Assembly: GCA_977017575.1 (NCBI GenBank)
Contig: CDRNVI010000188.1
Span: forward strand, 1-64,000
Reading direction: 5' to 3'
DNA: 64,000 bases
Source: Paramoeba atlantica
Lineage: Eukaryota; Protista; Discosea
Position 1 is the first letter of the stretch, and every line of letters begins with the position of its first letter. A program made the position numbers and the translations under genes. Shown here one piece after another: positions 1 through 56,150 of the stretch. The notes beneath the pieces are model-generated. The model ran no database searches. It worked only from the letters and a program-made list of their open reading frames with translations, and was not told the DNA's origin.

Positions 1-69
1 GTTTTGACAATCTTTTTGTTTTCTCGTCCTTCCTTTTTTTTCCTTCCTTATTTTTTGGGGAAATTTCAG

Positions 70-3000
70 GAACCGAACGATTCACATTCATCTCGAAAGT
101 TATTCGACCACCGCAATCCAAATTCTTTTGCTCTATATGTACACATCAACAAAACCATTTTCATCTTGCCTTCATTCTTGTCTTGCTTTGATCCAAGAGG
201 TTCAGATTTCTTTTTTTCAATCCCCACAAAAAAAAAGAAGAATTTTTCATGAATTGGTTTTTTAAAACCCTCAAAACATTCTTGATATCACAAATGGTTT
301 TCATGGTGTAGTGGTTAACATACGAGGTTTTGATTCTCGTGCCCCGAGTTCGATTCTCGGTGAGACCTAATTTTTTTGAATTAATTTTTTTTTTTTTTTG
401 TTTTCTTGCAGATGGGAGTGGTGGAAGAACCATGTGGCAATCACTCTCTTTTATGGCAACATTGGACTTCCCTTTGCACTAGTATTCAAAATGAAGCTAT
501 TGAATTAGCTTCTTTTTTGGGTCTTGAGTGTTCTCTTCCTGTGATGGACTTCCCGGAAGGAAAGACGGAATTGGATCTGTTCCCGACGTCGAAGTTGAAG
601 TCGTCGTGCTCCACTCCTTTTATCCACGAATCTTCCTCAGTTCCTTCCTTCGCACCTTCATTTCCTTCAACTCCACAACAATCTCTCTTTTCTATTCCAG
701 AACCTTCCTTTGCATTTCTCACCACCTCCACCATCTTTTTCAACTTCTTCATCAACAACTCTCTGTGGAGGAGAAAAACCCAAAAGCTGAAAGTTGTCAT
801 CACTCTTTATTGTTTTTTGGACCTTGAAGTCAAAGTTCCCAAAAAAACAAGAGTTCTAGAAGAGGTAAGAAATTAAAAAAGAGGAAGTTGGCACAAGCAA
901 TCAACTAAAACAAGGTTCAAAAAAATAGGATAATGGGAGAGAAATGTTTTCGTTTTTGAAAGAAAAACTTTTTTGCGACATTTTCTCGAAATTGTTGATT
1001 CTGGTTCCATTTTTCAAATCGCATTCAATTTCTTTTCTTAATCGGACTGAAACTCACTCCAATTCATTTCTTTTAGAAAGTGATTCTTCGACCTTGATTC
1101 CATGCCACAAACTTCTCCTTACCTCTCGCTCAGAGTATTTTTCAAGTTTCTCTTTTTTCTCTCATTCTCTTTCATTCCCTCTTTTTTTCTTATTTTTTTC
1201 AGCAATGCTGCTAAGTGGAATGCGAGAGTCTGGGACAGGGACAGTTCGTCTTCAAGCTTCTTTTTTTATAGCGATGGGATTATTAGAGTTCTCTTTTTCA
1301 TTTATAGTTTCTTTCTTCGAACCCTCTTTCCTCTCTTTTTTTTAATTGGAGTTTTTCTTTAGGTATATTTATACTGGGAATATGAACTTTAATGATCTTC
1401 TTCCATGTCTTGAAGCTCTGATCACCGCTGAATCTCTTCTACTACCTCATTTACAAGTCCTCTCTTGTCTTCTTCTTATTCTCCTGTCTTCTTTTTGACT
1501 CACTCTCCCCCCCTTTGCAGGAAAAGTGTGAGAAAAAATTGCTGACTCTGTTGAGGAGTGATAATGTCACTTCTGTATTAGAAGTTACCCAACAAATCAA
1601 TGCTCCGGTAAATCAAGTTTTTTTGATTTGACCTTTTTTTTGTCTCCTTTAACAGATTTATTTTGTTTCTGTCTCTCTTCTCTATTTTAGCTTCTAAAAA
1701 GTGGGTGTCTTAAATTTATTCTTCTGAATTTTGATGTTTTGCTGGCATCTGATCAAATTTTTGAGCTGGATGGTGAAGTTCTCTCTGATTTAGAAGAGAA
1801 AGCTCAATCTTTCATTTGTCCTCTTGTAACAAGATTTCTTTCTTTTCTTTCTGTGTTTCCCCAAAATTGAATCTTTTTTTTTCAGGCTGCATCCACTGTT
1901 TATTTTTCGAAATTGAGGAATTTTTTAAGAGAACCTGAACCATCCGCTTCTTTAATTACTGAATCTTTTGTTTCTTCTTGTTTGACTCCTTCTTCCTTAA
2001 GAAGAAAAGTACCACAGTTATACCCTACTTCTTCTGCTCCTTCAGTTCTTCCTTCTCCCGCTCTCTCTGGGACTGAATATGAAGAAGTGAAGGGATTGGT
2101 CGAAAAACAATTGAGAGCACTTCGAAAGAAAGAGAGAGAAATTGAAAAATTGAGAGAGTTGAAGAGGGATTTGACTTCAGAAGAAGAAATTAAACTCCTT
2201 TCACAGGTTTGAACTTTTTATTTTTCCTTCCAAAATTTTCTTCTTTCTGATTTGTGTCTTGTTTTTGATAGCATCTGGTTGAGAGAAAAATCGAAGAGCT
2301 CAGTTCTGTTCTTGAACAACTCATTAGCACAAGAGAAGAAGAGAAAGGAGTGAGAGAACCAAAAGGGGGGAGGAGAAGAAAAAGGAGAGGGAGAGGAGAG
2401 GCCAAAGATAGTGAAACAAAAGAATCAGGAAAAGAAGAAGAAAAAGAAGAAGAAAAAGAAGAAAAAGAAGGAAAAGAAGGAAAAGAAGAAAAAGAAGGAA
2501 AAGAAGTAAAAGAAGAAAATGAACTAATTGGGGGAAAAGACGAAAAAGAGGAGGAAGAGAGTGAAGGAAAGAGGGTTTGGGGAACTGAGACACCAAAAAA
2601 ATTAAGTTTTCAAGAAATTGAACAAGAACAGCAAAAACAGGTCATTTTCTCAGAGAGTTTTTCATCTTTTCTTTTGTTTCTTTCTTCTTTTTCAATTCTT
2701 CTTTTCTCTTCTTTTTTTTCTCATTTTTTTTTCTCCCTCCACAGTTAAAAATTCAAAAGAAAAGAACTCAACCCTCCAAAAAGAGCACAAAAAAACCATC
2801 TTCTCCTCTTACTCATCCTCCTCCTTCTTCTATTTCTCTCTCTGCTTATGCATCTGCTCCTTCTCCCCCTCTCTTTTCTCCTTCTTCTGATCGAAGCGCA
2901 CCTTGGGGAACTCCACCAAAATCTTCTCTTTCCTATTTCTCTTCCTCTCCCTCTCTCTCTCACGATTCTCCCTCTTTTTCGCCAATGAGCATTTTGGAAA

Positions 3001-3791
3001 TAGAGAAGGAGGAGAGAGGAAGAAAGGAGAGAGAAGAAGGGAGTTCTCAAAATGCGCACAAGTTTGAGAGTCTTTTCTTTTCTTTTTTTCTTCTTCTTTC
3101 TTTTCTCAACCCTTCACTTTCACAGAAAATCAAAACCAAAGAGTATTTTGGAAATCGAAAGAGAAGAAAAGTCGTTTCTTGAACAACAGCAAAGTCAAAA
3201 GAAAGCAAAGTTACTTTTCTTTTCTGTTTCAACCAAATATTTCTCTTCCTCTTCCCCCCTCTCTTGCTTTCTCATTTTTTTCTTTTTTGCAGAATTCTTG
3301 ATATTATGTCAGAGGAATTGGCACGAGCGCTTCAAGAAGAAGAAAACCAAATTGCTCGTCAAATTGAAGAAGAAGAGAGAAGAGAAGAGGAAGAGAGGCA
3401 GAGAGGGAGAGGCAGAGGGAGAGGGAGAGGGAGAAGAGGGGGAGAGAGAAGAGGAGGAGGGAGAGGGGGAGAGGGTAGAGGAAATAAGAGAGGGAGAGGT
3501 GGGAGAGGTGGGGGAGGTGGGGGAGGAGAGAGAGGAGGGAGAGGAGAGAGAGGAGAGAGAGGAGAGAAAGGAGAGAGAGGAGAGAGAGGAGAGAGAGGAG
3601 AGAGGAGAGAGAGAGGAGAGAGAGGAGAGAGAGAAGAGAGAAATGGGTCTGAGAGAAATGGGAGCGAGAATGAGAGGAGAGAAATGAGAGGTGGGGGAAG
3701 AGGGAGAAGTCAAAGAGGAAGGAGAGGAGAGAGAAGAGGAGAAGGGAGAGGAGGGGAGAGACAGCAACGTGAGGGGGAGAAACCGGGATAA
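70..3791 (+). CDS. Multi-BTB/POZ (BTB-BACK) protein, IBTK-like C-terminus; multi-exon, begins upstream of the window
   Basis: Exon 70-199 reads TIHIHLESYSTTAIQILLLYMYTS (BTB core). Exons ~1077-1145, 1203-1288 and 1363 onward join in phase to give IPCHKLLLTSRSEYFSTMLLSGMRES...LLEYIYTG (BTB signature). BACK-like CEKKLL...CLKFILLNFD follows, then a coiled coil, three SIL[ED]I-x-x-EE motifs and an RG/RGE-rich tail ending at TAA 3791. The exon chain between 412 and 1077 is unresolved. Confidence 0.75.
296..368 (+). tRNA. tRNA-Gln(UUG), intronic
   Basis: D arm GTGT/ACAT, anticodon arm CGAGG-TTTTGAT-TCTCG, T arm CCGAG-TTCGATT-CTCGG, 3' acceptor TGAGACC, followed by a T-run terminator. The 5' acceptor strand GGTTTTCA has one extra T (bulge or homopolymer error). 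Confidence 0.9.
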
Positions 3792-4160
3792 GAAATTCAT
3801 TCTTGAAAGAAGGAAACTCTTCCTGAAAAACTTCTTCTTTTTTTCCAAAAAATTCTCTTTGAAGGATTACAAGTTCAAAGAAGAGAAGAATTATGATGAG
3901 ACTTGAAAAACAAACTTTGATTTTAGGAGTCAAAAACATAATTTTGTGAAAAAATTTTGATGGTTTTTATTTTTGTCGTTTCTCTTCTGAGTGAGGCTTA
4001 CACACTTCCTCTTTCAATATCCCCCTTCTTCAACTGAAGGAAAATAATTGTAAAAAATGAAATGGTTCAAAAAATGAAAAACGAGTTTTTGGAGGTGCGA
4101 TTTTTTCTTTCTTGGTTTTCCGTTTCGTTGTTTTGTGCTCTCTCAGCTCCATGTCTGGTC

Positions 4161-5123
4161 ATGTCTTTTCTCTTGGCTCTTTCTTTTCTTTCTCTTCTCT
4201 TTTCATTCTCTCTTTCTCAATTGGTCTCAAATAAAACCCATGATGGCTACACTTGGGTGATTCCGCCAGAAAATAAGAATGTTCGCCGACCCCCTTTCCC
4301 AAACACTCCAACCATCCTTCTCTCGACCTACCCAAATTCTGGAAACACTTTTATTTTGAAAGTAATTCACTTTTTCTTGAAACCCTTTCTCTTTCCCTCT
4401 CTTTCTCTTTCTCTCTTTTCTCTCTCTCTCTCTCCCTTTTTCTCTTTCTCCTCTTTCTTCTTTTTGATTCTTTTTGTTGTTGGGAAGGTTTGGGAATTGG
4501 CAAGAGGGATTGGAGCTCAAGCTGTTTTTAAAGAGAAGGGAACACCAACTTCTGATTCCTTTGCCTTTGAGGGTTCAGTACATGGAGGGAAAATTGACAG
4601 ATTCTTCGACTCTCGAATTCTCAAAGATCGTACAACTAATCTAACGAGAAAAGAAATCCAAGATCGAATTCGGAAAGCAACGTTTCAAGAACCAGTCATT
4701 TTAAAGAATCATTTTCCAATTCTCCCGATGAAGATAGAGAATCTTTTTCAAGTTCGTTCTGTTCTTGGTGTTATTTCGACTCTTCGAGATGATGTCCAGG
4801 TAAATTGTGAAAAGATTTACCAAGGGAGACATTATTGCGATATGGAGAATGAGGAATTTCACACTTTTTGGTTCAATTTTTCTGTGGAGCATAAGATTCC
4901 TTTTGTTATTTATCCTTATGAGGATCTGATCTCTTCTCCTCTTGTTGTGTTTCGAGATATGTTTAAGAAATTTGTTCCTTTTGAGAAAATAAGAGATGAA
5001 AATATTACATGGGCGATTCACCATTCTCTACCACCAACAAAACAATCAAGACCAAAATCGAGTAAATTCCTCGAATGGAAAGAAAACAAACAACAGGAAG
5101 AGAGGAAAAAAATGAAAACCTGA
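4161..5123 (+). CDS. Secreted or membrane-anchored P-loop sulfotransferase (WSCD-like), copy 1
   Basis: Hydrophobic N-terminus, 5'-PSB-like LLSTYPNSGNT, then PVILKNH and YPYEDL. One in-frame 126-nt intron at 4362-4487 (gtaatt...gaag). Paralogous to the four genes at 35828-40767. Confidence 0.75.
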   Translation: MSFLLALSFLSLLFSFSLSQLVSNKTHDGYTWVIPPENKNVRRPPFPNTPTILLSTYPNSGNTFILKVIHFFLKPFLFPSLSLSLFSLSLSPFFSFSSFFFLILFVVGKVWELARGIGAQAVFKEKGTPTSDSFAFEGSVHGGKIDRFFDSRILKDRTTNLTRKEIQDRIRKATFQEPVILKNHFPILPMKIENLFQVRSVLGVISTLRDDVQVNCEKIYQGRHYCDMENEEFHTFWFNFSVEHKIPFVIYPYEDLISSPLVVFRDMFKKFVPFEKIRDENITWAIHHSLPPTKQSRPKSSKFLEWKENKQQEERKKMKT

Positions 5124-5263
5124 AAAAAAAAAACAAAGAAAATTTTAGAACTCTAAAATTTAGCGTCCACCTTTTTGTTGTTTTTTCCGTTGATCCTCTG
5201 TGATTCCTCTTATCCTCTTGTTTCTTCCTTTTCCTTGATTCCAAAAGATCCGATAGACCAGCG

Positions 5264-6714
5264 ATGGGTGTTGATGAAAAATGGAAAGGGTTTCAAGACC
5301 TTTCTGACCAACTGGAAAAACAACCAACATTCCCTTTCTGTGAAGCGACTTTTTTTTTCTTGGCTTTTCTTTGTTTGTTGCATGCAACACGACACAACTT
5401 GCGTCATGTTGTGGTGTTGGCCGGAGCTTTGATTGGAGGGACTGCCAATGATCTCTTTTTTATGACCTTACCCTTTGTTGATAACTTTTGGCATGCGCAA
5501 GGAACTGTGATGATCACTCCTCGTCTTCCTTTGTATATTCCTTGTGTTTATATTTGTTTTATGTATATTCCGATTGTTTCTTCTTGGCGTTCTCCTCCTC
5601 AACTTCCTCGTTTGGCACGGTTTTGTCTCGCAGGACTCTCTGGCGCTCTCTTTTATTGTATCTTTGATATTACTGGAGCCAAATTTTTATGGTGGACTTG
5701 GCATGATACAGATGCTGGTGTTTTTCATCGGTGGTTAGGAGTTCCTGTTGGAAGTACTCTCTGGACGATTATTCACATCTTTTGTATTTGTTTGATTCTT
5801 TCTTGGTCTGGAATTTGGTTAGATTCGAGTCAAAAGGGAGATAAAAAACCATTGTCGATTCAGAAAGCGATCTTTAGTGTTCTTATGATTGGAATCTTTA
5901 GCACCCCTTTAATGATGCTCACAATGATCCCCTTCCAACTCCACCAAATTCGTTTTGAATTGGAACCATCGTTTCATATTACCCAATTACCTGGAAAGCC
6001 AGATTATATTTCTCTTTGGTTAGCCATCGCTCTCTTCTCTCTGATTGTAATGATGGGGATGATAAACAAGAAACCGAATCCTCGTGAGATTCTCTTTCAT
6101 CCAGGGAGATGGTTAGATGGGATCTTGTTTTTTGGGGTTGTGATCTATTGCGCTGTCATGGCTGGAGTTATGATTTATGGCGATCCTTCAATTGTTGTTG
6201 CTGAGGTGAGAAATTTTAATCTGATCAGTCTCTCTTTTGCTTTTTTTCCTCTTTCTTTTGAATTTTTTTTTCAGCCTTTTATTTTTTTTGGTTCTGATCA
6301 ATTATTTTTATTTCAAAAACGACACCAGGGAGTCCATCAAGAATATGGTGATTGTCGAATTGTTGATTATGATCTGTCAAACTATGCCCGTTTTAAATAT
6401 CTTTGTGCTCAAGACTACAATGAAGACTTTGTTTTTAATTGTGTGGAACAGGTAATTTGATTTTTTTTTCATTTATTTTTCTTTGAAATACCAAAAAAAA
6501 AAATAGATTTTTTTTTAATTAAAATTGTAACTCTCTCTCTCTCTTCTTTCTCCATCAGATTCTCCCACCACACGATCCAGCCTGGTACACTCTTTGCGGA
6601 AAGGCACATACAAACTATCTTCTTTATGCTTGGGTTGTTGCTTCGTTTGCTCTGTGTTGTGTGGGGCTCTATGCACAATTACTTTTCAACCACCCAAAAG
6701 TAAAATCTTCTTGA
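5264..6714 (+). CDS. Uncharacterised multi-pass membrane protein with a WWTWHDTD...GVP motif (DUF7802-like from recollection)
   Basis: Long ORF with many hydrophobic helices and FDITGAKFLWWTWHDTD...WLGVP. Introns at ~6206-6344 and 6452-6558. The last exon reads WYTLCG and ends at TGA 6714. Confidence 0.7.
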
Positions 6715-6745
6715 AAAAGAGAGAGAGTCTCTTCTTTTTCTATTT

Positions 6746-7911
6746 TCACCACGAAAAACTCTCCTCTGTATATTTTTTCTTCCTGAGATAGAAAGTATTT
6801 CCTAAACGATCCCAGATTGTAAGAGTTTGCCCATAATTCACATGGAAGTAATTGTGGTGGTCATCATGGTAGAGACTGCTTGGTTGCCAGGGGAACCAAC
6901 TCTCAAAATATACTCCGGAATGGTCAACGACATTGTGGAAATGGACATACAATAGGTTTACGATGAGGGAAGAAATGTGGGTTGGGATAAAAAATAAACC
7001 TTTCAAGAAAAAGAATGAGGGGAGGGGAAAGGGAAAGAGATCAAAAAGAGGGAAAATGAGAGAGAGAAAAGTTAAAAAAAGAATGGAGAGATAAAAAAAA
7101 AGAAGAAGAAAAAGAGAGATGCATACCAAGAAAAACTCCTCCTTGAACAAATATCATATCAACAGGATGGAGACCTAAACCAGAAAACGCAGTTGGTTGG
7201 CGATAAGCGTGATGAACTTTATGGCACCAAAGATAAAGAAAAGGGATATGAAGAATGCGATGTGAAAAGTATGCCCAAAGATCAATCCAGAGGAACAAAG
7301 AGATTGTTGAAGTGATAACAAAGGGGATAGAAGAAGGGAAATTAAAATCTGTGTAAATTAAGACAACGCCTGGGTGTGTGAAGTAAAGGATTGTGATCAG
7401 AGATGTGAGCACAGCAGCGAGACAGAGATTGCCCACTGCCAAATACACCTTTTTTTTCGAGAAAGATTTTTAAAATATTGTTGAACAAAAATATAAACAA
7501 AAGAGAAAGAAAAAACAAAAAGAAGAAAACCTCAGATCGAGCAAGCGTTTCAACATTATGAGTTTTTTCACCTTGACACCGAAGTTGAGGATGCGCTTGA
7601 TAAAACCGATCAAACCAACGAGCAAAGGGGACAAAAGTGAGAATAGAAAGAACAGCAGTACAAACAGTGCCATAAAGAAAAGTTGCCATTGGATTTGTTT
7701 GTATTTCTTCCGCTGTTGTAATTTGCAAACCACAACAAAGAGAAAGACAAAAAACCGAAGAGGATATCCCAGCCGGCGTACAGAAAAAGGAGACAGCTGC
7801 GAAGATCCCAAAAACGTGGAGCGAACTTTGAAGCGGGTTGGAAAGTTTCAGAACATTATTGTATCCTGCTCTTCTCGCCTTTTCGATTGTTCCAGAAGGG
7901 AGAGAGGGCAT
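6746..7911 (-). CDS. Sterol desaturase / fatty acid hydroxylase superfamily oxidase (ERG3/SC5D-like)
   Basis: Three histidine boxes (HRILH, HKVHH, HDDHH) and NYGQTLTIWDRLGNT, spread over several exons. The start at 7911 is tentative. Confidence 0.85.
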
Positions 7912-8128
7912 CTTCTCTCGGCAAGAACACATTCCAAAACAAAAACTTCGCGAAAACAAAGAGCGAAAACAAAAAGAAAATTTAGCCAATCCTCACTTTT
8001 TTTAGCGCCCTTTCGAAAAATGAAAGAAAATTTCCATTTTCCCAGAGCATCATTTGTTTCGATTTTATCTTTCAGTTGAACACTCAGTGAGTCACTTCTT
8101 CTCTAACTTGAAAGAGATCATTTTATTG

Positions 8129-11100
8129 TCAAGGATTTATCTTTTTTCTTTGATAGAATAAAATATATGCATCTCTTGACACAATCCTCGATTCTTCACA
8201 AGGTGAAACACGAGAATCATCAAAATTGTACCATTTTCCATCAATTGAGGATTTTGCAGAAACTCTAAAATGCCCAGTTTGATGCTTCCCGAGGTGAGTC
8301 ACAACAGCATAGAGATCATACAAAAGTTTTTGTCCTGAAGGATTTCTTATTGTATGATTCGACATATCGAGCTCGTGGATTGGGAATGTGACGAAACTGT
8401 CATTCTTGTCGTACCTGGGAATCAAAGAGTAGGTTTGAGAGGAGTGGGGTTGCCAAAAGAAAAATCCGTTTTAAAGAGATGGATGAAAAATTGACCTTGA
8501 TTTTGTTGGCATTCGATCAAAATGAAAGATGAGCAATTCTGGGCAATGATAGAACTCAACAACCTTTGCTCCTGACACTTTTTGATTGCAGTGGCAGCAA
8601 AAAAATTCACAATCTTTCTCTTGAGTTGCTAACATTGACAAACAGGATTCCAAATCTGAAGTTGGTCGTTGAGAATAGAAACTTGAATCACGATAATCTC
8701 TGGGGTCATCAGTAGATAAATCATAAACAGATCTCAGAACTTGTGGCTTCCATTCTAAAATCAGACAAATGTTCTTTCCCTCTTTGGAATGGGAGAGAAG
8801 AACCGGGTAATCGTCTCCAAGATCGTATAAAGTTTCCCGTTTTTGAGAAATTTGGGGGTTCGTCAGTATCATCTTGAAGAGTGGAGAAGAATAATCTATC
8901 GTGTCTTCTTTTCCCTAGCGAAAGGAAATATTTTTATCATTCAAGGGAAAAAGAAAAACCAAAAAATGTTCAACAAGATACCTCAGTGAAATAAGGAATA
9001 AGTTTTTGAGTTTGTAGAAAGAGTCGTCTTTGAATTGCATGGACCATCTAACCCAAAGAAATGAGATAAAAGGTGGTGAATTCAAAAAAATGAAATCAAG
9101 AACAATTACCTTTTTCTCCAATTGTTTGTAATTGACAGATTTTGAAATGGAACAAATTGTTGGAACCGAAAATAATTGGTTCTGGTCAGTTCTCCATTGG
9201 AAAACACGAATATGCAAGAGATCATCCTCTGGTTCGAAATCTTCTTCTTTCATTTCTTCTTCCTCTTCTGGAATTAAAAAAAAGTCTTTAAATTCGGTCT
9301 TTGTTTTGAAAAAAATCATAACAGAAACCTTCTTTTTTCTTGTTCTTGTTTTGACTTGTCCTTCCTTCAAGCTCAAACACAAAGATATCATCGTCGTTTG
9401 AAATCTCAGTCAAACTCTCTTCCTCAGAAAATTCGTATGTGAATCGGTTTTCCTCAACTTTGGCAACAAACATCGGGTCTTTTGGTATTCCAATTAACTA
9501 AAAAAAATAAGATGAACATTCTTTAAAAAGGAAAAGAAACAAAAGAAACAAAAGAAACAAAAGAAACAAAAGATACATTACTCACAATTTCCTTTAAATC
9601 ACAAATCTTTCCTCCAATTGGGACATCTGCAGAAATTGTAAGCGGAATAAAAGAAGGATCTTTCCAGACAAGAACAAGTCTGATGAGTCTCGTTTTTGAA
9701 ATTGGGATTGGGAGAGAAAGAGATGGTGTTGCGTCGAAGGATGTTGTTGTGAGTTTGCACTTTGAACACTTCCAAGTCGACTTTAATTGGCCCTAGATTG
9801 AATACAATTTTAAAATTTTGAGCAAAGATGATGAGTTATTTTGGAAAGTAAATAAAAAGAGAAAGGAAGCAAACATGAAAAAGGTCAACAATAACTGAGT
9901 CATTGTTCATTAAGTGCTTTTGCCAAGCTTCCTTGGCGAGAATCTGAATTAAAATTCAATTCATCAATCACATAATAAATCATAATAATAAATATAACAA
10001 TAAATAAAATAAAATAAAAATTACTTCTTCAGGAGGTTCATCATTCTTCATAAACGCCTTTTCAGAAACAAATGGCGCCACTCTCGCCTTAACACGATTT
10101 AAATCTTCATGCATTTCATTTAATAAATACAATAAAAATTCATAACAATCATGAAATTGAAAACCACAATATCGTGGCGCAAATTTTGAGAGGAAGTGTT
10201 TGAATTCTCGAGGAGCGAAAGCAGAATATTGTTCTCCCCATAAAAGTTCGAAAAGTTGTGAAATTTGGATTGGTAAAGTTCCGTTCGTTCCGAGTGGATT
10301 TGTGGGATTGATCTCTTGTCTTGGGGAAAAATGAATCAGTTTTTGAAAAACAAAGGACAAAAAAGAGAAAATAAAAAGAAAGAGAAAGGGAGAAAGAATT
10401 TAAAAAAAAAAGAAAAGAAAAAAAGAAAAGAAAAAAACAAACTCAAAAGTTTTGGACAAGATATAATCTCTCAGGGGAGTTGTTTGACTGAGAGATTGGA
10501 TTGCACTATTTAAAAAACAAGTATTTCCCATATTTCTTAAACCACACAATCCTGGAGGAGTTGGTTCTTTTCCACCCCCCCTATTTTTAAAGGAAAAAGA
10601 AAGAGATTTAGAGAAGAATTTCTCTTGTGTTTGAGAGAAAAGAGAGAGAGAGGGAGAGATGAAAAGAAAAGAAAAAGAACCACGGAGAGTATCCATATTC
10701 GTTCGTCTCTTCCCTAAACAATAAAAACATTTAATAAATCTCTTTTTTTCTTCCAAAAAATAAAAGAGAAAAGAAAGAAAAGAAAAAGAGAAAGGAAAAA
10801 GAGAAAAGAGAAGAGAAAAGAAAAGAAAGAATGAAAAGAAAGAAAAAACCTTCTGAAAGTGAAATTTCCTTCAAAATTTCTTTCTTCAATCATGATCTTT
10901 TGTCGATCGACCAGTCCAGATTGGGAGATCTCTCTTTCCATTTGGGTCAATAATTTTCTGCTGTTGAGAGAACGAGAAAAGAAATGCAAGAGAGAAAAGA
11001 GATGAGAAGGGAGAGAAGGGAGAAAGAGAGAGAAAGGAGAGAGAGAGAGGAAAAAGAAAGAAGAAAGAAAGAAGAAAGAAAGAAAGAAAGAAATAATTAA

Positions 11101-48020: not shown

Positions 48021-48485
48021 ATGAGTGGCGAAGAAGAATGGAAAGCAAGAATTTTAGTGAATGAGAATTGGACTTCCCTTGCGAAGGGGTTAAATGGATG
48101 TACTTCGAAAGTGGCCTTCTTAATTCAACAAAAACTTTCTGAAGAAGAACTTGCTCTCCCTTTTGATGGAGCTCTTTATTTCCCTCCAGATGATCTTCGT
48201 TTTTTTCCAACAAAGAGACTTGATGAAGAAGTGGAAAAGTTTGAGAAATTAGTTTCTTTTGTTGGTGGAATTGAAGGAAAATGTTTGGCAATTTGGGCTG
48301 ATAAGAATGATCGGGATATGAAAGATACAATGGTAGAGAAACTTCATTTGAAAGAAAGAAGTTGTGAATGGTATTGGGATTATTTTCGTGATGATGAGAG
48401 GGTTGACGATTTCTACCTTCGAATCGGTAAATTTTTTGAAGAGAATACTCAACAACAATATCAGATTAAACCAGCAAAGAGGTGA
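48021..48485 (+). CDS. Tandem family copy 1: intronless ~155-aa alpha/beta protein ending IKPAKR (putative Ras-fold pseudo-GTPase)
   Basis: Intact ATG-TGA frame; one of seven paralogues spaced ~700 bp apart. Confidence 0.8.
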   Translation: MSGEEEWKARILVNENWTSLAKGLNGCTSKVAFLIQQKLSEEELALPFDGALYFPPDDLRFFPTKRLDEEVEKFEKLVSFVGGIEGKCLAIWADKNDRDMKDTMVEKLHLKERSCEWYWDYFRDDERVDDFYLRIGKFFEENTQQQYQIKPAKR

Positions 48486-48601
48486 ATTTTTCTTTCGGAT
48501 TGATCATTGACTTTGAACTGATTCACCATTTTGAATGTCTTTTCTCTTTGTTGTTTTTGTGTTGAGAAAAAGTTTTGCAAATCATTTTCAAACTTTTTGT
48601 T

Positions 48602-48688
48602 GAAAGAGAAAGAGAAAGAGAAAGAGAAAGAGAAAGAGAAAGAGAAAGAGAAAGAGAAAGAGAAAGAGAAAGAGAAAGAGAAAGAGAA
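48602..48688. repeat. (GAAAGA)n microsatellite expansion in the array spacer
   Basis: About 14 units here versus 2-4 in the other spacers. Confidence 0.9.
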
Positions 48689-48782
48689 GAACAAACTTTT
48701 TAAATTTTGACTTCAAGAATTTTAGAGTGCTATTTTTTTTCTGTTTTTGTTTTCGTTTTCTCTCTTTTGGTTTTGGGGAAGG

Positions 48783-49250
48783 ATGAGCGATGGTGGTGAA
48801 GAGGAATGGAAGGCAAGAATTCTCGTGAACAAGAATTGGACTTCCCTTGTGAAGAGGTTAAATGAAATTACATCGAAAGTGATCTTCTTCACCCAAGAAA
48901 AACTTTCTGAAGAGCTTGTTCTCCCTTTTGATGGAGCTCTTTATTTCCCTCCAGAGGATCTTAGTACTTTTTCAACAGAGCAACTCAATGAAGAAGTGGA
49001 AACATTTGAGAAATTTGTTTGTTTGGTTGGTGGAATTGAAGGAAAGTGTTTGGTAATTGGGGTTGCAGTGGGTGATCGGGATATGAAAGATACAATCGGA
49101 AAGAAACTTCTTTTGAAAGAAAGAAATTGTGAGTGGTTTTGGGATTATATCGATGATGGTGAGAGGATCGAGGTTGCCTACCTTCGAGTCTGTAAATTTT
49201 TTGAAGAGAATACTCAACAACAATGTCAATTCAAACCAGCAAAAAGGTGA
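48783..49250 (+). CDS. Tandem family copy 2 (ends FKPAKR)
   Basis: Intact frame. Confidence 0.8.
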   Translation: MSDGGEEEWKARILVNKNWTSLVKRLNEITSKVIFFTQEKLSEELVLPFDGALYFPPEDLSTFSTEQLNEEVETFEKFVCLVGGIEGKCLVIGVAVGDRDMKDTIGKKLLLKERNCEWFWDYIDDGERIEVAYLRVCKFFEENTQQQCQFKPAKR

Positions 49251-49477
49251 TTTTTATTGATCATCATTTTGAATGAGATTGATTTTGAACTGATTCACCA
49301 TTTTGAATGTCTTTTCTCTTCTTTGTTTTGTGTTGAGGAAAAGTTTTGAAATTTTTTGTTGAAACGAAAGAAAGAGAAAGAAAAGAACAAACTTTTTGGA
49401 TTTTGACTTCAAGATTTTAGAGTGCTATTTTTTTCTGTTTTTTGTTTTCGTTTTCTCTCTTTTGGTTTTGGGAAAGG

Positions 49478-49950
49478 ATGAGTGATGGTGGTGAAGAGGA
49501 ATGGAAAGCAAGAATTCTCGTGAACAAGAATTGGAGTTACCTTTTGTGAGGAGGTTAAATGATCGTACATTGAAAGTGATCTTCTTCAACCAAGAAAAAC
49601 TTTCTGAAGAAGAACTTGTTCTCCCTTTTGATGGAGCTCTTTATTTCCCTCCGGATGATCTTCGTAATCTTTCAACAGAATAACTCAATGAAAAAGTGGA
49701 AAGATTTGAGAAATTTGTTTCTTTTGTTGGTGGACTTGAAGGAAAATGTTTGGCAATTTGGGCTGATAAGAATGATCGGGATATGAAAGATACAATGGTA
49801 GAGAAACTTCGTTTGAAAGAAAGAAATTGTGAATGGTTTTGGGATTATATTGCTGATGACGAGAGGATTGAGGAGGTCTACCTTCGAATCTGTAAATTTT
49901 TTGAAGAGAACACTCATCAACAATGTCAAATCAAACCAGCAAAAAGGTGA
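49478..49950 (+). pseudogene. Tandem family copy 3, disrupted
   Basis: +2 T insertion near 49542 (CCTTTTGTG versus CCTTGTG) and TAA at 49681-49683 where paralogues have a Glu or Gln codon. Confidence 0.75.
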
Positions 49951-50157
49951 TTTTTGTTGATCATCATTTTGAATGAGATTGATTTTGAACTGATTCACCA
50001 TTTTGAATGTCTCTTCTCTTCGTTGTTTTGTGTTGAGAAAAAGTTTTGCAAATCATTTTCAAACGAGAAAGAAAAGAACAAACTTTTTTTATTTTGACTT
50101 CAAGAATTTTAGAGTGCTATTTTTTTCTGTTTTTGTCTCTTTTGGTTTTGGGGAAGA

Positions 50158-50628
50158 ATGGGTGATGGTGGTGAAAAATAATGGAAGGCAAGAATTTTAG
50201 TTAACAAGAATTGGAGTTCCCTTGTGAGGGGGTTAAATGATTGTACATCGAAAGTGATCTTCTTAATCCAAGAAAAACTCTCTGAAGAAGAACTTGCTCT
50301 CCCTTTTGATGGAGCTCTTTATTTCCCTCGAACTGGTATTCGTACTTTTTCAACAGAGCAACTCGATGAAGAAGTGGAAAGATTTGAGAAATTTGTTCGT
50401 TTTGTTGGTGGAATTGAAGGAAAGTGTTTGGGGATTTGGGTTGATAAGAATGATCAGGGTATGAAAGATACAATGTTTGAGAAACTTCGTTTGAAAGAAA
50501 GAGGTTGTGAGTGGTGTTGGGGTTATATCAGTGATGGTGAGACGATCAAGGATGTCTACTATCAAATCTGTAAATTTTTTGAAGAGAATATTCACCAACA
50601 ATGTCAAATCAAACCAGCAAAAAGATGA
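50158..50628 (+). pseudogene. Tandem family copy 4, premature stop at codon 8
   Basis: ATG GGT GAT GGT GGT GAA AAA TAA TGG AAG GCA; paralogues have GAA at the TAA position. Confidence 0.75.
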
Positions 50629-50863
50629 TTTGGATTGATCATCATTTTGAATGAGCTTGATTTTGAACTGATTCACCACCTTGAATGCCTCTTCTCTTGT
50701 TGTTTTTTTTTAAGAAACATTTTGAAATTTTTTGGGTGAAACGAAAGAGAAAGAGAAAGAAAAGAACAATTTTTTGTTTCAATTTTCTTTTTTCCTTTTC
50801 TTTTTCAAGTTATGTGTTTCGTTGAAATGTTGTTGTTCAAAGTTTTTATTTTTGTTTTGGCAG

Positions 50864-50902
50864 AAGAGAGCCAAAAATATCAAACCAGCCAAAAGATCCT
50901 AG
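50864..50902 (+). pseudogene. Orphan terminal exon KRAKNIKPAKRS* with its own acceptor
   Basis: TTTTGGCAG|AAGAGAGCCAAAAATATCAAACCAGCCAAAAGATCCTAG resembles the last intron end and exon of the ankyrin gene at 56097-56150. Confidence 0.6.
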
Positions 50903-51202
50903 AAAGAGAATAAAACAAAAGAATATCTCTCTCTGAAGAATCATCATTTTGCATGAGCTTGATTTTGAAAACCAATGAATCATTTCGAAGTGTTGAGAAA
51001 AGTTTTCAATTTCTTTTCTTTTTTGTTTGAAAGAAAGAAAGAGAAGAAGGAAAGAGAAGAAGAACAACAGACCTTTTCAACGGAAAGTTTGTTGAAAGAG
51101 AAAGAAAGAACAAACTTTTTAGATTTTAATTCTTTAAATTTTAGAGTGCTATTTTTTCTGTTTTTGTTTTCGTTTTCTCTTCTCTTTTAATTTTGGGGAA
51201 GG

Positions 51203-51670
51203 ATGAATGATGGTGGTGAAGAGGAATGGAAGGCAAGAATTTTAGTGGACGAGAATCTGGATTACCTTGTGAAGAGGTTAAATGAAACTACACCGAAAGT
51301 GATCTTCTTAATCCAAGAAAACCTTTCTGAAGAAGAACTTGTTCTCCCTTTTGATGGAGCTCTTTATTTGCCAAAGGATCTTCGTTTTTTTTCAACAAAG
51401 ATACTTGATGAAGAAGTGGAATCATTTGAGAAATTTGTTTCTTTTGTTGATGGACTTGAAGGAAAGTGTTTGGCAATTTGGGCTGATCAGAGTGATCGGG
51501 CAATGGAAGATACAATGGTAGAGAAACTTCGTTTGAAAGAAAGAAATTGTGAGTGGTGTTGGGATTATCTTCATTTTAACGAGAGGAATGATGCTGTCTA
51601 CCTTCGAATCTGTAAATTTTTTGAAGAGAACACTCAACAACAATGTCAAATCAAACCAGCAAAAAGGTGA
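51203..51670 (+). CDS. Tandem family copy 5
   Basis: Intact frame ending QIKPAKR*. Confidence 0.8.
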   Translation: MNDGGEEEWKARILVDENLDYLVKRLNETTPKVIFLIQENLSEEELVLPFDGALYLPKDLRFFSTKILDEEVESFEKFVSFVDGLEGKCLAIWADQSDRAMEDTMVEKLRLKERNCEWCWDYLHFNERNDAVYLRICKFFEENTQQQCQIKPAKR

Positions 51671-51905
51671 TTTTTGTTGATCCTCATTTTGAATGAGATT
51701 CACCATTTTGAATATCTTTTTTCTTTGTTGTTTTGTGTTGAGAAAAAGTTTTGCAATTCATTTTGAAACTTTTTGTTGAAACGAAAGAGAAAGAGAAAGA
51801 GAAAGAAAAGAACAAACTTTTTGGATTTTGACTTCAAGATTTTTAGAGTGCTATTTTTTTCTGTTTTTTGTTTTCGTTTTCTCTCTCTTTTGGTTTTGGG
51901 AAAGG

Positions 51906-52403
51906 ATGAGTGATGGTGGTGAAGAGGAATGGAAGGCAAGAATTTTAGTGAACCTCAATTTGAGTTACCTTGTGAAGAAGTTAAATGGAAGTACATCGAA
52001 AGTGGCTTTCTTCATCCAACAAAAACTCTCTGAAGAAGAACTTGTTTTCCCTTTTGATGGAGCTCTTTATTTCCCTGCAGATGATCTTCGTGCTTTTTCA
52101 ACAGAGGAACTCAATGAAGAAGTGGAAAGATTTGAGAAATTTGTTCGTTTTGTTGATGGAATTGAAGGAAAATGTTTGGGAATTTGGGTTGAGGTGGATG
52201 ATCAGGGTATGAAAGATACAATGGTAGAGAAACTTCGTTTGAAAGAAAGAAATTGTGAGTGGTTTTGGGATTATATTGATGATGGTGAGAGGGTCGAGGA
52301 TCTCTACCTTCGAGTCGGTAAATTTTTTGAAGAGAATACTCACCAACAATGTCAAATTAAACCAGCAAAAAAGGTGATTTTTATTGATCATCATTTTGAA
52401 TGA
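51906..52403 (+). CDS. Tandem family copy 6 (extended tail IKPAKKVIFIDHHFE)
   Basis: One extra A in the run 52367-52372 shifts the stop; this may be a homopolymer error. Confidence 0.75.
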   Translation: MSDGGEEEWKARILVNLNLSYLVKKLNGSTSKVAFFIQQKLSEEELVFPFDGALYFPADDLRAFSTEELNEEVERFEKFVRFVDGIEGKCLGIWVEVDDQGMKDTMVEKLRLKERNCEWFWDYIDDGERVEDLYLRVGKFFEENTHQQCQIKPAKKVIFIDHHFE

Positions 52404-52635
52404 GATTGATTTTGAACTGATTCACCATTTTGAATGTCTTTTCTCTTCATTGTTTTGTGTTGAGAAAAAGTTTTGCATTTCATTTTCAAATTTTTTGTTG
52501 AAACGAAAGAGAAAGAGAAAGGGGAAGAGAAAGAAAAGAAAACAAACTTTTTGGATTTTGACTTCAAGATTTTTAGAGTGCTATTTTTTTCTGTTTTTTG
52601 TTTTCGTTTTCTCTCTCTTTTGGTTTTGGGAAAGG

Positions 52636-53106
52636 ATGAGTGATGGTGGTGAAGAGGAATGGAAGGCAAGAATTCTTGTGAACAAGAATTGGAGTTACCT
52701 TGTGAGGAGGTTAAATGATCGTACATTGAAAGTGATCTTCTTCAACCAAGAAAAACTTTCTGAAGAAGAACTTGTTCTCCCTTTTGATGGAGCTCTTTAT
52801 TTACCTCCGGATGATCTTAGTAATCTTTCAACAGAAGAACTCGATGAAGAAGTGGAAAGATTTGAGAAATTTGTTTCTTTTGTTGGTGGAATTGAAGGAA
52901 AGTGTTTGGCACTTTGGGTTGAGGTGGATAGTCAGGACATGAAAGATACAATGGTAGAGAAACTTCGTTTGAAAGAAAGAAATTGTGAGTGGTTTTGGGA
53001 TTATGTCGATGAGAGCGATAGGGATGGGGATATCTACCTTCGAATCTGTAAATTTTTTGAAGAGAACGCTCATCAAAGTCAGATTAAACCAGCGAAGAGG
53101 ATGTAA
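52636..53106 (+). CDS. Tandem family copy 7 (ends IKPAKRM)
   Basis: Intact frame. Confidence 0.8.
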   Translation: MSDGGEEEWKARILVNKNWSYLVRRLNDRTLKVIFFNQEKLSEEELVLPFDGALYLPPDDLSNLSTEELDEEVERFEKFVSFVGGIEGKCLALWVEVDSQDMKDTMVEKLRLKERNCEWFWDYVDESDRDGDIYLRICKFFEENAHQSQIKPAKRM

Positions 53107-53491
53107 TCGAAAATACTTGGGTCTTTTCCTTCAGTGTTGGTTTGCAAAAATCTCTCTTGAAAGATTTGAATCTCCTTTTTTTTTTCTGCTTTTCTTTTCA
53201 AACAACAAAAAGACAAAAAAATCAAGAATATTCGAAAAAAATTGGTTGATTGAATAATTTGTCTTCAAAATTCAATGAAAACTTCAGAAGAGGAAATCAA
53301 ACCTCTTTTATCTAAATAAGAATCAAAAAAGTTTTTCTCTTTTTGTGCCAATTTTCTTGTCTCTTTTTCTCTTTCTCCTCTTTCTCTCTTTTTCTGATCT
53401 CAGAAATCAAGAACTTATTTTCTTCAAAAGATCAAATCTCAACACCTCTCCTCTATCTCTCACCTTCCCCGCACAAAATCAACAAAAGAAG

Positions 53492-56150
53492 ATGGCAGAA
53501 GAAGAAGAAAAGAGCTCAGAAAACGAGATTCTTTTTGATGCTGTTGAGAAAGGAGATAAAGAACTTGTCAAACTTCTTCTTCAAAACAAGACTCAAAAAT
53601 TGAATATCAACTTCAAAAACAAGGTTTTCAAAAACAATTGCTTTTTCTGATCTGAGGGAGAGAGAGAGAGAGAGATGGTTGTTGTGTTGATGATTTGTTC
53701 TTTTTTTTGTAAAAACTTTTTTTGGAAAAACTTTTTTTGTTTTCAGTTTGGAAAGACCGCTCTTCGCATCGCTGCTTCTGAAGGTTTTGAAGAGATTGTG
53801 AAAATTCTGATTGAACATGGATCCAATGTTGATCTTCAAGATCGAGTTTTGTTTTTCTTTTTTGATTTGTTTTTTGATTTGTTTTTTTTTTCAATTCTTC
53901 TTTTTTGTTCAGCGTGGTGACACTCTTCTTCACTCTGCTGCTTCCTGTGGGTATGAAGAAATTGTAAAAATTCTTGTTGAACATGGATCTAACATTGATA
54001 TTCAATCCATGGTTTTGATTTTCTTTTTTCTTTTATTTTTTGTTTTCTCACTTTTGTTTGTTGCGATGGAGATGGTTGTGATGATGATATGTTTTTTGAT
54101 CTTTTTTTAAAAACTTCTTCTCTGTTTAGTCTGGGGAAACTGCTCTTCACAAAGCTGCTCACAAAAATGCTCACGAAAAAGTTGTGAAATTTCTTGTTGA
54201 ACATGGGTCCAATGTGAATCTTCAAACCAATGTTTTGAATTTTCTTTTTTTTCTTTGTTGTTGTTTAGAATCTTTTGGCTTGTTTCTGATGTGATCGGGG
54301 AGGGAGAGATGGTTGTGTGAGTGATTTTTTTTTAACTTCTTTTTTGTTCAGCCTGGATGGACCGCTCTTCACAAAGCTGCTGGCATAGGTTCTGAAGAAG
54401 TTGTGAGAATTTTGATTGAACATGGATCCAATGTGAATCTTCAAACCAAAGTTTTGTTTTTGTTTTGCTTTATTCTTTCTTCTTTTATTTTATTTGGCTG
54501 ATGGGAAGATTGTGTGATTTGAGTGAGGATTGGAGTGAGTGGAGTTTTGTACTTTGATTTTTAACTCTCTTTTGTGAAGGATGGAGCAACTGCTCTTCAC
54601 AAAGCTGCTGAACGTGGTTTTGAAGAAATTGCAAAAATACTTGTTGAACATGGGTCCAACATTCATCTTCAAGATCGAGTTTTGATTTTCTTTTTCTTTT
54701 GATTTGTTGTGATGATGATATGATCTGTATTTTGAAGATCAGTTTTATTTGGCTGATGGAAGATTGTGTAATTTGTGGGAGGGTCGTAGTGGGTGGAGTT
54801 TTGTATTTTTTTTTTAATTTCTTTTTTAAGATTGGACGAACTGCTCTTCACAAAGCTGCTTCCAATGGTTTTCAAGAAATTGTGAAGATTCTTGTTGAAG
54901 AAGGATCCAACATTGATCTTCAAATCATAGTTTTGATTTTCTTCTTTGATTTTTTGTGGTGTTGGAGGGTGAGAGAAGGTTGTGTATGGTTTGTTTTTGT
55001 TTCTTATTTTAAGCTTCTTTTTTGAGGATGGAAATACCGCTCTTCACTATGCTGCTTCGAAAGGCTTTGAAGAAATTGTGAAGATTCTTATTGAACACGG
55101 AGCCACCCTTGATCTTTCAAATCAAGTTTTGATTTTTCTTTTTCTTTGTTTTCACATTTTTTTTCTTGTTTTTGATTATTGGTCATTTATTTTGGTGTGA
55201 TGGAGAGGGTGATGGTTGGTGCAATGATTTGTTTTTGGTTGTTCTTTTTTGTTAAAACTTCTTTTGTTAAGAGTGGAGAGACCGCTCTTCATTGGGCTAC
55301 TTCGGAGGGGAATAAAGAAATTGTGAAACTTCTCGTTGAACATGGAGCCAATGTTAATCTTCAAGATGCCGTTTTTATTTTCTTTGTCTCATTTTTATTT
55401 GGTTGTTGATGTGGTGGGAGGATAAAAGAGACGAAGAGAGAGTGAGAGAGAGTGAGAAGGTTGTGTGATGATTTGTTTTGTTCTTTTTTAAACTTCTTTT
55501 TGTTCAGGGTGGAGGGACTGCTCTTCACACAGCTGCTGATGATGGTTCGAAAGAAATTGTGAAACTTCTTGTTGAACATGGATCTAACATTGATATTCAA
55601 TCCATGGTTTTGATTTTCTTTTTCTTTTTTGATTTGTTTCTCTCATTTTGATTTGTTGTTTTTTGGTTGTGTGATGATTTGTTTTTGTTTTCCTTTTTAA
55701 CCTTCTTTTTTATTTAGCTTGGGTGGACTGCTCTTCACCTATCTGCTGAGGGTGGTTATGAAGAAATTGTGGTCATTCTTATGGAACATGGAGCCCAGAT
55801 TCATCTTCAAACCAAAGTTTTGATTTTCTTTTTTGATTTTTTTTTTACTGTGTCATTGTTATTTTGTTATTTTTGTTATTTTATGGGGAGGGGGTATTGG
55901 CATGATTCTTTCTTTTTTGAACTTTCTTTTTTTTTGTTAGGGGGGTAAAACAGCGCTTGATGTTGCAAAAGATCAGAGTATTATTGAATTGATCACCCAA
56001 TTGAAAGTTTGCTCTTTGTTTATCTCTCTTTTTCTTTTCAATTTTAATTTGAATGTGTTTCTCATTTTTTTAATTTTTCTCTTTTTGGTTTTGCAGAGCA
56101 AAAATATCAAACCAGCTCGAAAAAAAAGAAAACTAAACTCTGAGAGTTAA
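53492..56150 (+). CDS. Ankyrin-repeat protein, one repeat per exon, 13 exons
   Basis: Exons at 53492-53623, 53747-53845, 53913-54011, 54130-54231, 54352-54450, 54580-54678, 54831-54929, 55027-55125, 55272-55370, 55508-55606, 55718-55816, 55941-56006 and 56097-56150. All introns are phase 0. Consensus xGxTALHxAAxxGxEEIVKILVEHGSNVxLQxx. Confidence 0.93.

What the first reader, a model, noticed from the sequence alone, without database searches (positions are those of the whole stretch)
48021..53106. Seven-copy array of intronless proteins resembling Ras/Rab GTPases stripped of all G-motifs
Seen: ~155-aa paralogues with no introns in an intron-dense neighbourhood. By-eye alignment follows small-GTPase order. 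WKARILV-NKNWTSLVKRL corresponds to beta1 and helix 1 (GKTSLxxR) with the P-loop collapsed. KVIFFNQEKL corresponds to beta3/switch II (WDTAGQE). FDGALY corresponds to beta4 (ADGAILVY). KCLVIGV corresponds to beta5 without NKxD. CEWFWDY corresponds to beta6 without SAK. IEEVYLRICKFFEE corresponds to helix 5, followed by a basic tail without CAAX. Inference: a compact pseudo-GTPase family, possibly decoys or scaffolds for GTPase-targeting factors, undergoing rapid expansion. I do not recognise it as a named family.
Basis: inference. Interest (0 to 1): 0.75.

Follow-up and report, generated by a model that had tools for sequence, protein, structure and literature searches.

The report
Expanded dead-GTPase-like protein family, amoeba
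A marine amoeba carries dozens of tandem, intron-free genes for a small unnamed protein that folds like an Arf-type GTPase but has lost every nucleotide-binding motif. The loops where the nucleotide would sit vary fast, so it is probably a diversified binding module and not a switch.

Summary
Window 48021-53106 carries seven tandem units of about 700 bp. Five have intact ORFs of 154-165 aa, two are pseudogenes, and a relic of an eighth 3' end sits in one spacer. The genome has at least 60 matches in several arrays. Only 30 cluster representatives exist among 1.84 billion public proteins, none named, and there is no Pfam hit.

So "class-i pseudoGTPase-like, probably Arf-derived" is the best reading, at about 55%. 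It is not proven.

New points: an invariant C-terminal KPAK[RK] tail; a conserved face at the strand starts; and fast-varying loops at the strand ends (omega about 2.4, against 0.6 elsewhere). Open frames are kept far more often than neutral decay allows, and a related species transcribes the gene.

This same stretch was noted earlier in the scan, in an overlapping window.

The parts
48021..48485 (+). Copy 1, intact ORF, 154 aa, ends KPAKR + stop
48783..49250 (+). Copy 2, intact ORF, 155 aa
49478..49950 (+). Copy 3, pseudogene: first ~22 codons in another frame (frameshift near 49545) and in-frame TAA at 49681-49683
50158..50628 (+). Copy 4, pseudogene or very recently inactivated: single TAA at 50179-50181 (codon 8), otherwise full length
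50879..50902 (+). Relic of the 3' end of an eighth unit (codes ..IKPAKRS + stop), followed by the usual 3' flank, inside the 1042-bp spacing between copies 4 and 5
51203..51670 (+). Copy 5, intact ORF, 155 aa; the protein modelled (model 1)
51906..52403 (+). Copy 6, intact ORF, 165 aa; the usual stop after KPAK[RK] is missing, so 10 residues follow KPAKK
52636..53106 (+). Copy 7, intact ORF, 156 aa (ends KPAKRM)
48486..48782 (+). Example of the ~230-300-bp spacer that is duplicated with each unit (T-rich stretch before ATG, conserved 3' flank; here with a perfect (GAAAGA)14.5 run at 48602-48688)
   Evidence: repeat families D3, D6

Best explanation
The array encodes members of a lineage-restricted, unnamed family of stand-alone proteins of about 150 aa, with no signal peptide (read by eye). 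Each is a single three-layer alpha/beta domain that most resembles an Arf/G-alpha-type G domain. It has lost the P-loop, the switch I/beta2 segment and the DxxG, NKxD and SAK motifs. That makes it a class-i pseudoGTPase-like module that should neither bind nor hydrolyse GTP.

Shown: the genes are real and under selection. The family grows and shrinks by tandem duplication and pseudogenisation. Amino-acid change is concentrated in the loops at the C-terminal ends of strands 1, 3, 4 and 5; three of these correspond to the G1, G4 and G5 positions. The loops at the N-terminal ends of the strands and a disordered C-terminal tail ending in KPAK[RK] are nearly invariant.

Inferred mechanism: the invariant face plus the tail docks on one common partner or compartment. 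The fast-varying former nucleotide pocket recognises many different targets. The family would then act as a set of diversified adaptors or recognition modules, possibly in conflict with microbes, viruses or the endosymbiont, and not as enzymes or switches.
For: Real and selected genes:
- 20 of 28 close-subfamily copies in the genome are full length and stop-free.
- Simulation: 45 random substitutions, the mean distance from the consensus, leave about 9% of ORFs open.
- The KPAK codons vary synonymously and the stop context differs between subfamilies, so the constraint is on the protein.
- A relative (P0009) sits on two contigs of JGI sample 3300017035, which I take from memory to be a culture transcriptome, from a related species with ~80% nucleotide identity.

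Fold:
- Model 1: pLDDT 88.8, pTM 0.84. Model 2: pLDDT 85.4, pTM 0.81. Both have five strands and five helices.
- Foldseek on model 2: the top 50 are almost all Arf/Arl/G-alpha, with TM up to 0.65.

Sequence:
- hhalign of the family profile against an Arf profile is collinear over 127 columns, P 0.011, and P 0.0039 with a 95-sequence Arf profile.
- 0 of 60 column shuffles and 0 of 60 block shuffles reach the native score.
- The alignment puts a 4-residue gap in the P-loop and deletes switch I/beta2 and the DVGGQ segment. It pairs the near-invariant Asp98 with the NKxD Asp, and the LRLKER..W block with Arf's LGL...R.W.

Polarity of variation:
- 255 nonsynonymous against 25 synonymous changes in the 45 loop sites at the strand ends (omega ~2.4).
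- 167 against 64 in the other 110 sites (omega ~0.6). Fisher P 4e-8.
- Invariant blocks lie at 42-46, 49-52, 84-90, 108-113, 117-122, 139-141 and 151-154.

Rarity: 30 representatives in 1.84 billion proteins, none named.
Against: - For window copy 5 the non-redundant structure search does not separate G domains from other flavodoxin-like folds: TIR 9.6, Arf6 9.1, receiver and SDR about 8. Foldseek lists flavodoxins next to Arf.
- The models have five parallel strands. Without the antiparallel beta2 the topology is generic, and I could not read strand order from coordinates.
- The HH probability is only 2-9%. The first comparison against a mixed GTPase profile was out of register.
- The loop regions for the omega contrast were drawn after seeing the site counts. 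Gene conversion among tandem copies distorts parsimony counts.
- Overall pairwise dN/dS is 0.85, which taken alone would also fit relaxed constraint.
- No partner, localisation or expression data exist for this genome itself. The function of the KPAK tail is a guess.
Confidence: 0.5

Rival explanations
1. The domain is a flavodoxin-like alpha/beta module with no GTPase ancestry: TIR-like, receiver-like or a new superfamily. The Arf resemblance is then only the shared 2-1-3-4-5 parallel sheet. The expansion and the variable loops would still make it a binding or signalling module, for instance a TIR-like immune adaptor.
Against: No member hits any TIR, receiver or flavodoxin Pfam model, even at E 10. 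The genome gives no TIR_2 match. The receiver acidic pocket and Lys, the flavodoxin FMN loop and the TIR box motifs are not among the conserved columns. In model 2, G domains fill ranks 1-14 and lead the best non-GTPase by 1.7 Z. The only collinear profile signal found is to Arf. TIR and receiver profiles could not be compared the same way.
Confidence: 0.3
2. The units are alternative exons of one larger gene, perhaps the ankyrin-repeat gene just downstream, and not separate genes. The T-rich tract before each ATG would be a 3' splice site and the AG|GTGA at the stop a 5' splice site.
For: Each ATG is preceded by a pyrimidine-rich tract ending in AG. Many copies end in ..AAAAG GTGA... An array of single-repeat ankyrin exons follows on the same strand from about 53.5 kb.
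Against: Met1 is invariant in all 54 aligned members, and a stop follows KPAK within 0-10 codons in every subfamily. The nucleotide contexts differ (AGG TGA; AGA GAA AAA TAG; CGT TAA), and the KPAK codons vary synonymously. The related-species transcript runs unspliced through both putative sites. The ankyrin gene has its own Met start near 53.49 kb. Other arrays and single environmental copies have the same stand-alone size.
Confidence: 0.04
3. The array is a decaying repeat with chance or relic open frames and has no present function.
For: Pairwise dN/dS is near 1 (median 0.85; parsimony omega 1.1). Two of the seven window copies and 8 of 28 close genomic copies are broken.
Against: The intact fraction (71%) is far above the ~9% expected from stop codons alone under neutral change. 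Variation is strongly site-heterogeneous, with long invariant blocks. Subfamilies at 25-40% identity keep length, fold and the KPAK tail. A relative is transcribed.
Confidence: 0.05

Closest known systems
Class-i pseudoGTPases: CENP-M, p190RhoGAP pG1/pG2, AAGAB psGD, the Fbx4 substrate-binding domain (PMC4080450, PMC5593906, PMC12490416)
   Same: G-domain-like fold without the G motifs, presumed unable to bind nucleotide, used for protein-protein binding. CENP-M, p190RhoGAP pG1 and Fbx4 appear among the structure hits. In AAGAB the beta6-alpha5 loop binds the substrate (PMC12490416); the equivalent loop here (residues 123-132) is the most variable.
   Different: The known examples are single-copy, conserved across eukaryotes and mostly parts of larger proteins or fixed complexes. 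This family is stand-alone and lacks the beta2 strand. It has an invariant KPAK[RK] tail, at least 60 tandem-array copies in one genome with fast-varying loops, and almost no relatives elsewhere. No sequence homology to any of the known examples was seen.
Arf/Arl small GTPases (Pfam PF00025) and the Ras-like domain of G-alpha
   Same: Best structural matches. The only collinear profile match. A shared pattern around helix 4 and the next strand (LxL...R.W) and a long last helix.
   Different: No P-loop, switch I/beta2, DxGGQ, NKxD or SAK. No N-terminal amphipathic helix or myristoylation Gly2. About 30 residues shorter. Pfam Arf and Ras models do not match at E 10.
TIR domains (for example the plant RPS4/RRS1 TIR, PDB 4c6t)
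   Different: No TIR Pfam hit in any member. No conserved TIR box motifs or catalytic Glu context among the conserved columns. Outranked by many G domains in model 2.

Membership tests
Ras-superfamily small GTPase (Arf/Ras/Rab) | G1 P-loop GxxxxGK[ST] between beta1 and helix 1 | tested here: not met
   No such motif in 54 aligned members. The beta1-helix1 link is only 3-4 residues in both models. hhalign places a 4-residue gap there. One distant member (P0046) has GEGLGGFS, which lacks the Lys.
Ras-superfamily small GTPase (Arf/Ras/Rab) | G3 DxxG, G4 [NT]KxD and G5 SA[KL] motifs | tested here: not met
   None is conserved. The G4 position reads W-[AV]-[DE]-x-x-D, with only the Asp kept. The G5 position reads W-D-Y or F-G-A-G.
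Ras-superfamily small GTPase (Arf/Ras/Rab) | Six-stranded mixed sheet with antiparallel beta2 and switch I | tested here: not met
   Both models have five strands. About 17 residues corresponding to switch I/beta2 are absent.
Ras-superfamily small GTPase (Arf/Ras/Rab) | Match to the Pfam Ras/Arf models or to a GTPase profile | tested here: inconclusive
   No Pfam match at E 10 for any of 46 members. Weak collinear hhalign match to Arf (P 0.004-0.03). Rab/Rho aligns out of register.
Class-i pseudoGTPase | G-domain fold | tested here: inconclusive
Class-i pseudoGTPase | No nucleotide binding and no hydrolysis | not testable with these tools
   Predicted from the absence of G1-G5. Needs a MANT-nucleotide or thermal-shift assay.
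TIR domain | Match to the TIR/TIR_2 profiles and conserved box motifs with the catalytic Glu | tested here: not met
CheY-like receiver / flavodoxin | Acidic pocket, phospho-acceptor Asp after beta3 and Lys after beta5 (receiver); FMN-binding loop after beta1 (flavodoxin) | tested here: not met
   The positions after beta1, beta3 and beta5 are variable, or read Pro or Trp-Asp-Tyr. No Pfam hit.

The most novel reading that the evidence does not exclude
Paramoeba-type amoebae have built a germline-encoded intracellular recognition repertoire on a dead Arf-like G-domain scaffold. It consists of dozens of tandem genes. The former nucleotide pocket is under diversifying selection and binds varied targets from microbes, viruses or the kinetoplastid endosymbiont. 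An invariant face plus the KPAK[RK] tail couples every member to one common effector or compartment. This would be a new kind of innate-immunity-like or symbiont-control system, and a use of pseudoGTPases that I did not find described.
Probability: 0.2. Interest if true: 0.8.

Novelty: new variant of a known kind. Interest (0 to 1): 0.55.

Why it matters
The pseudoGTPases I compared against (CENP-M, p190RhoGAP pG1/pG2, AAGAB, Fbx4) are conserved proteins or domains with fixed partners; that they are few and single-copy is my own knowledge. A stand-alone, heavily duplicated pseudoGTPase-like family with a fast-varying ex-nucleotide pocket would show that a dead enzyme scaffold can be reused as a variable binding surface, as ankyrin or LRR scaffolds are. 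The family is almost confined to one amoeba lineage: it has 30 sequence clusters among 1.84 billion public proteins. Members of that genus infect farmed fish and sea urchins and carry a eukaryotic endosymbiont (PMC5601477). The family is therefore a candidate for host-microbe or host-symbiont interplay. The invariant C-terminal KPAK[RK] motif is a clear handle for finding the common partner.

Tried and rejected
- Pfam scans of three copies, and then of all 46 aligned members, at E 10 gave only scattered chance hits.
- A profile search of PDB sequences gave nothing below E 0.39.
- The ESM Atlas look-alike search gave no hit above 0.84 and no shared family.
- The protein comparison failed on the two alignments. 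hhalign with -glob, or with the untrimmed GTPase alignment, gave artefactual scores from gappy C-terminal columns. I discarded those runs.
- IMG/VR scans with P0039 and with the family alignment found no viral relatives. The broader alignment was too divergent to make patterns.
- No TIR_2 match exists in this genome, so a same-genome TIR control profile could not be built.
- The word search with the Arf alignment returned almost only Arf1 orthologues, so it added little diversity to the Arf profile.
- The idea that KPAKR + TGA is a conserved splice donor was rejected on codon evidence.
- A literature search for the KPAKR motif found nothing relevant.
Full report
**1. What is in the sequence**

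The region 48.0-53.1 kb holds seven direct repeat units with start-to-start spacings of 765, 700, 678, 1042, 706 and 730 bp. Each carries a paralogous + strand ORF. Copies 1, 2, 5, 6 and 7 are intact, at 154-165 aa. Copy 3 begins at ATG 49478, shifts frame near 49545 and has an in-frame TAA at 49681. Copy 4 is full length except for a TAA at 50179, in codon 8. The extra 340 bp between copies 4 and 5 contain the last codons (..IKPAKRS, stop) and 3' flank of an eighth, otherwise deleted unit at 50879-50902. The spacers are duplicated together with the ORFs (families D3 and D6).

**2. Separate single-exon genes**

All 54 aligned members start with Met. All stop 0-10 codons after an invariant K-P-A-(K). 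The KPAK codons vary synonymously (CCA/CCT/CCC, GCA/GCG, AAA/AAG), and the stop context differs between subfamilies. The conservation is therefore on the protein and not on a splice donor.

A relative, P0009, lies on two contigs of JGI sample 3300017035, which I take from memory to be a culture transcriptome. The source is a related species; the ORF region is about 80% identical in nucleotides to this genome. Those contigs run unspliced through the T-rich stretch before the ATG and through the stop. The ankyrin gene downstream has its own start.

**3. Size and spread of the family**

A six-frame search of the window's own 45.7-Mb assembly gives 60 matches. There are two larger arrays on contig C148, at 45-54 kb and 112-124 kb. 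Copy 5 is 92% identical to one of those copies, so C148 is either a segmental duplicate or another haplotype. Diverged subfamilies at 30-39% identity sit in arrays on C140, C190, C139 and C178/C207. Of 28 close-subfamily copies, 20 are full length and open, and 8 are broken or truncated.

Outside this genome the family is very rare. The word search found 21 proteins. A full HMMER profile scan of 1.84 billion representatives found 30, all of them 47-243 aa, unnamed, and from ENA or JGI metagenome or transcriptome assemblies. The 11 whose sequences I read are single-domain (one is a truncated fragment), and the 9 complete at the C-terminus all keep the KPAK tail. No relatives were found in IMG/VR.

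Earlier notes of this scan call the organism a marine amoeba with a kinetoplastid partner. In support, an intron-free Arf on contig C44 is 100% identical to a protein from the MMETSP0151_2 transcriptome and 88% identical to Arf1 of Perkinsela sp.. A Paramoeba-type host is therefore likely (PMC5601477), but I did not verify the species.

**4. Are the genes under selection?**

Median pairwise dN/dS among 20 close copies is 0.85. A parsimony count on a tree gives 427 nonsynonymous and 92 synonymous changes, omega about 1.1. This average hides strong contrasts between sites. Positions 42-46, 49-52, 84-90, 108-113, 117-122, 139-141 and 151-154 never or almost never change. Positions 17, 20, 21, 25, 29, 58-62, 67, 95-97 and 123-132 each take 8-11 amino-acid changes with few or no synonymous ones.

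Grouping the loops that follow strands 1, 3, 4 and 5, with the first helix turns, gives 255 N against 25 S (omega about 2.4). The rest gives 167 N against 64 S (omega about 0.6; Fisher P 4e-8). There are two caveats: I drew the regions after seeing the counts, and gene conversion disturbs such counts.

Independently of this, random substitution at the observed distance from the consensus (mean 45 nt) leaves only about 9% of ORFs free of stops, while 71% are open. The family is maintained by selection, with birth and death of copies.

**5. Fold**

Model 1 is copy 5 with a 46-sequence alignment: pLDDT 88.8, pTM 0.84. Model 2 is a C190-type member, 39% identical, with a 54-sequence alignment: pLDDT 85.4, pTM 0.81. 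Both show strand-helix alternation with five strands and five helices, and disordered ends.

Structure searches gave the following:

| Search | Result |
|---|---|
| Model 1, Foldseek PDB | Arf1 and Arl2 first (TM 0.54-0.56), then flavodoxins and CENP-M, all near E 1e-4 |
| Model 2, non-redundant VIA search | Ranks 1-14 all GTPases (Arf6 11.5 at rmsd 2.8 over 126 residues; Arl13B 11.2; G-alpha-i 10.6; HflX 10.6; MglA 10.5). First non-GTPase is a receiver at 9.8. TIR 9.5, p190RhoGAP pG1 9.4, Fbx4 9.6 |
| Model 2, Foldseek PDB | Top 50 nearly all Arf/Arl/G-alpha, TM up to 0.65 |

G domains are the best match overall, but by a modest margin. Once the antiparallel beta2 is gone, a G domain should have the same strand order as flavodoxin-like folds. 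I infer that order; I could not read it from coordinates.

**6. Sequence link to GTPases**

No Pfam model matches, and no PDB sequence matches. I built profiles from intron-free GTPases of the same genome. Against a Rab/Ran/Rho profile, hhalign finds only out-of-register matches (P 0.2-0.3). Against an Arf/Arl/Sar profile it finds one collinear alignment over 127 columns, P 0.011, improving to P 0.0039 with a 95-sequence Arf profile. The control comparison of Arf against Rab/Rho gives 99.7% probability. None of 60 column shuffles (mean 11.8, sd 2.0) or 60 block shuffles (mean 14.2, sd 2.7) reaches the native score of 23.0.

The alignment has these features:
- It shortens the P-loop by four residues.
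- It removes switch I/beta2 and the DVGGQ segment.
- It pairs the DGxLF strand with Arf's DGVIFVVD.
- It pairs the near-invariant Asp98 with the Asp of NKxD.
- It pairs the LRLKER..W block with Arf's LGL...R.W.

This agrees with the structural ranking in pointing to Arf and not to Ras/Rab. HH probabilities of 2-9% are far from proof.

**7. Reading**

Shown by these results:
- a real, selected, rapidly turning-over gene family;
- no G motifs;
- a confident alpha/beta model with G domains as the best match;
- strong polarity between a variable face and a conserved face;
- an invariant C-terminal KPAK[RK] tail.

Inferred from the topology of parallel alpha/beta folds: the variable loops lie on the side where GTPases hold the nucleotide, at the G1, G4 and G5 positions plus the loop after strand 3. 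The invariant loops, the acidic N-terminus and the basic tail all emerge on the opposite side.

Best mechanism (about 50%): a nucleotide-free, pseudoGTPase-like adaptor. Its conserved face and tail dock on a common partner, and its variable pocket recognises diverse targets. In the class-i pseudoGTPase AAGAB, the loop equivalent to the most variable one here binds the substrate (PMC12490416).

The tail resembles a short basic nuclear-import or membrane-binding motif. That comparison is from memory only and was not tested. The 'decoy for GTPase-targeting factors' idea is untested.

**8. Rivals**

- A flavodoxin-like module with no GTPase ancestry, TIR-like or new (about 30%).
- Alternative exons of a larger gene (about 4%; the evidence against it is in section 2).
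- Functionless decaying repeats (about 5%; the evidence against it is in section 4).

**9. Novelty**

I found no description of this family: there are no names in any source, and the motif search of the literature was empty. It is best filed as a new variant of a known kind, the pseudoGTPase. It is unusual in being stand-alone, lacking beta2, carrying a fixed tail motif and being massively and recently duplicated with diversifying loops. No follow-up of it was available to me.

**10. Limits**

- There are no coordinates for the models and no full HHpred libraries.
- There are no expression data for this genome.
- The selection analysis is crude.

Noticed in passing
G000 contig C188 71771-73399, beyond the window end (L059:7771-8361:- and L059:8803-9399:-); also L058:1507-2094:+ and L058:2349-2939:+ on C148: Pairs of intron-free Rac/Rho-type GTPases with an intact P-loop, a TKxD-type G4 motif and CAAX lie about 19 kb downstream of the array, and about 9 kb downstream of the matching C148 array. 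In each pair one copy has a degenerate switch II (WDTACPAV or WDTPCPAY in place of WDTAGQE), so it may be GTPase-deficient. Four more Rac-like genes stand in tandem on C164 (L060).
   Followed up: partly
window 53490-56150, + strand: An ankyrin-repeat gene with its own Met start and about ten near-identical exons of one repeat each (repeat families D4 and D5) directly follows the array. The distant relative P0039 also has an ankyrin gene as its upstream neighbour (L046:5117-5782). Whether ankyrin genes recur next to other arrays could not be checked.
   Followed up: partly
L046 (ENA ERZ26869290 ctg311739), 1-9276: The most distant relative with context (P0039, 23% identity, ends CKPAKI) sits on a 10.6-kb contig of densely packed, apparently intron-free ORFs. 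They include an mRNA cap N7-methyltransferase, a thioredoxin and an ankyrin protein, and most are orphans. The contig looks like a giant virus or a very compact eukaryote. No IMG/VR relative was found.
   Followed up: partly
G000 contig C44 296447-296959 (L047:1486-2031:+): An intron-free Arf1 gene is 100% identical to a protein of the MMETSP0151_2 transcriptome and 88% identical to Arf1 of Perkinsela sp. CCAP 1560/4. The assembly therefore seems to include contigs of a kinetoplastid endosymbiont beside the amoeba nucleus.
   Followed up: no
window 48602-48688: A perfect (GAAAGA) microsatellite of 14.5 copies sits in the spacer between copies 1 and 2. Shorter versions of it occur in the other spacers (for example 51783-51811).
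   Followed up: no
window 51906-52403 (copy 6): The usual stop after KPAK[RK] is missing in copy 6, which adds ten residues after KPAKK. So the tail is not always the exact C-terminus in an otherwise intact copy.
   Followed up: yes
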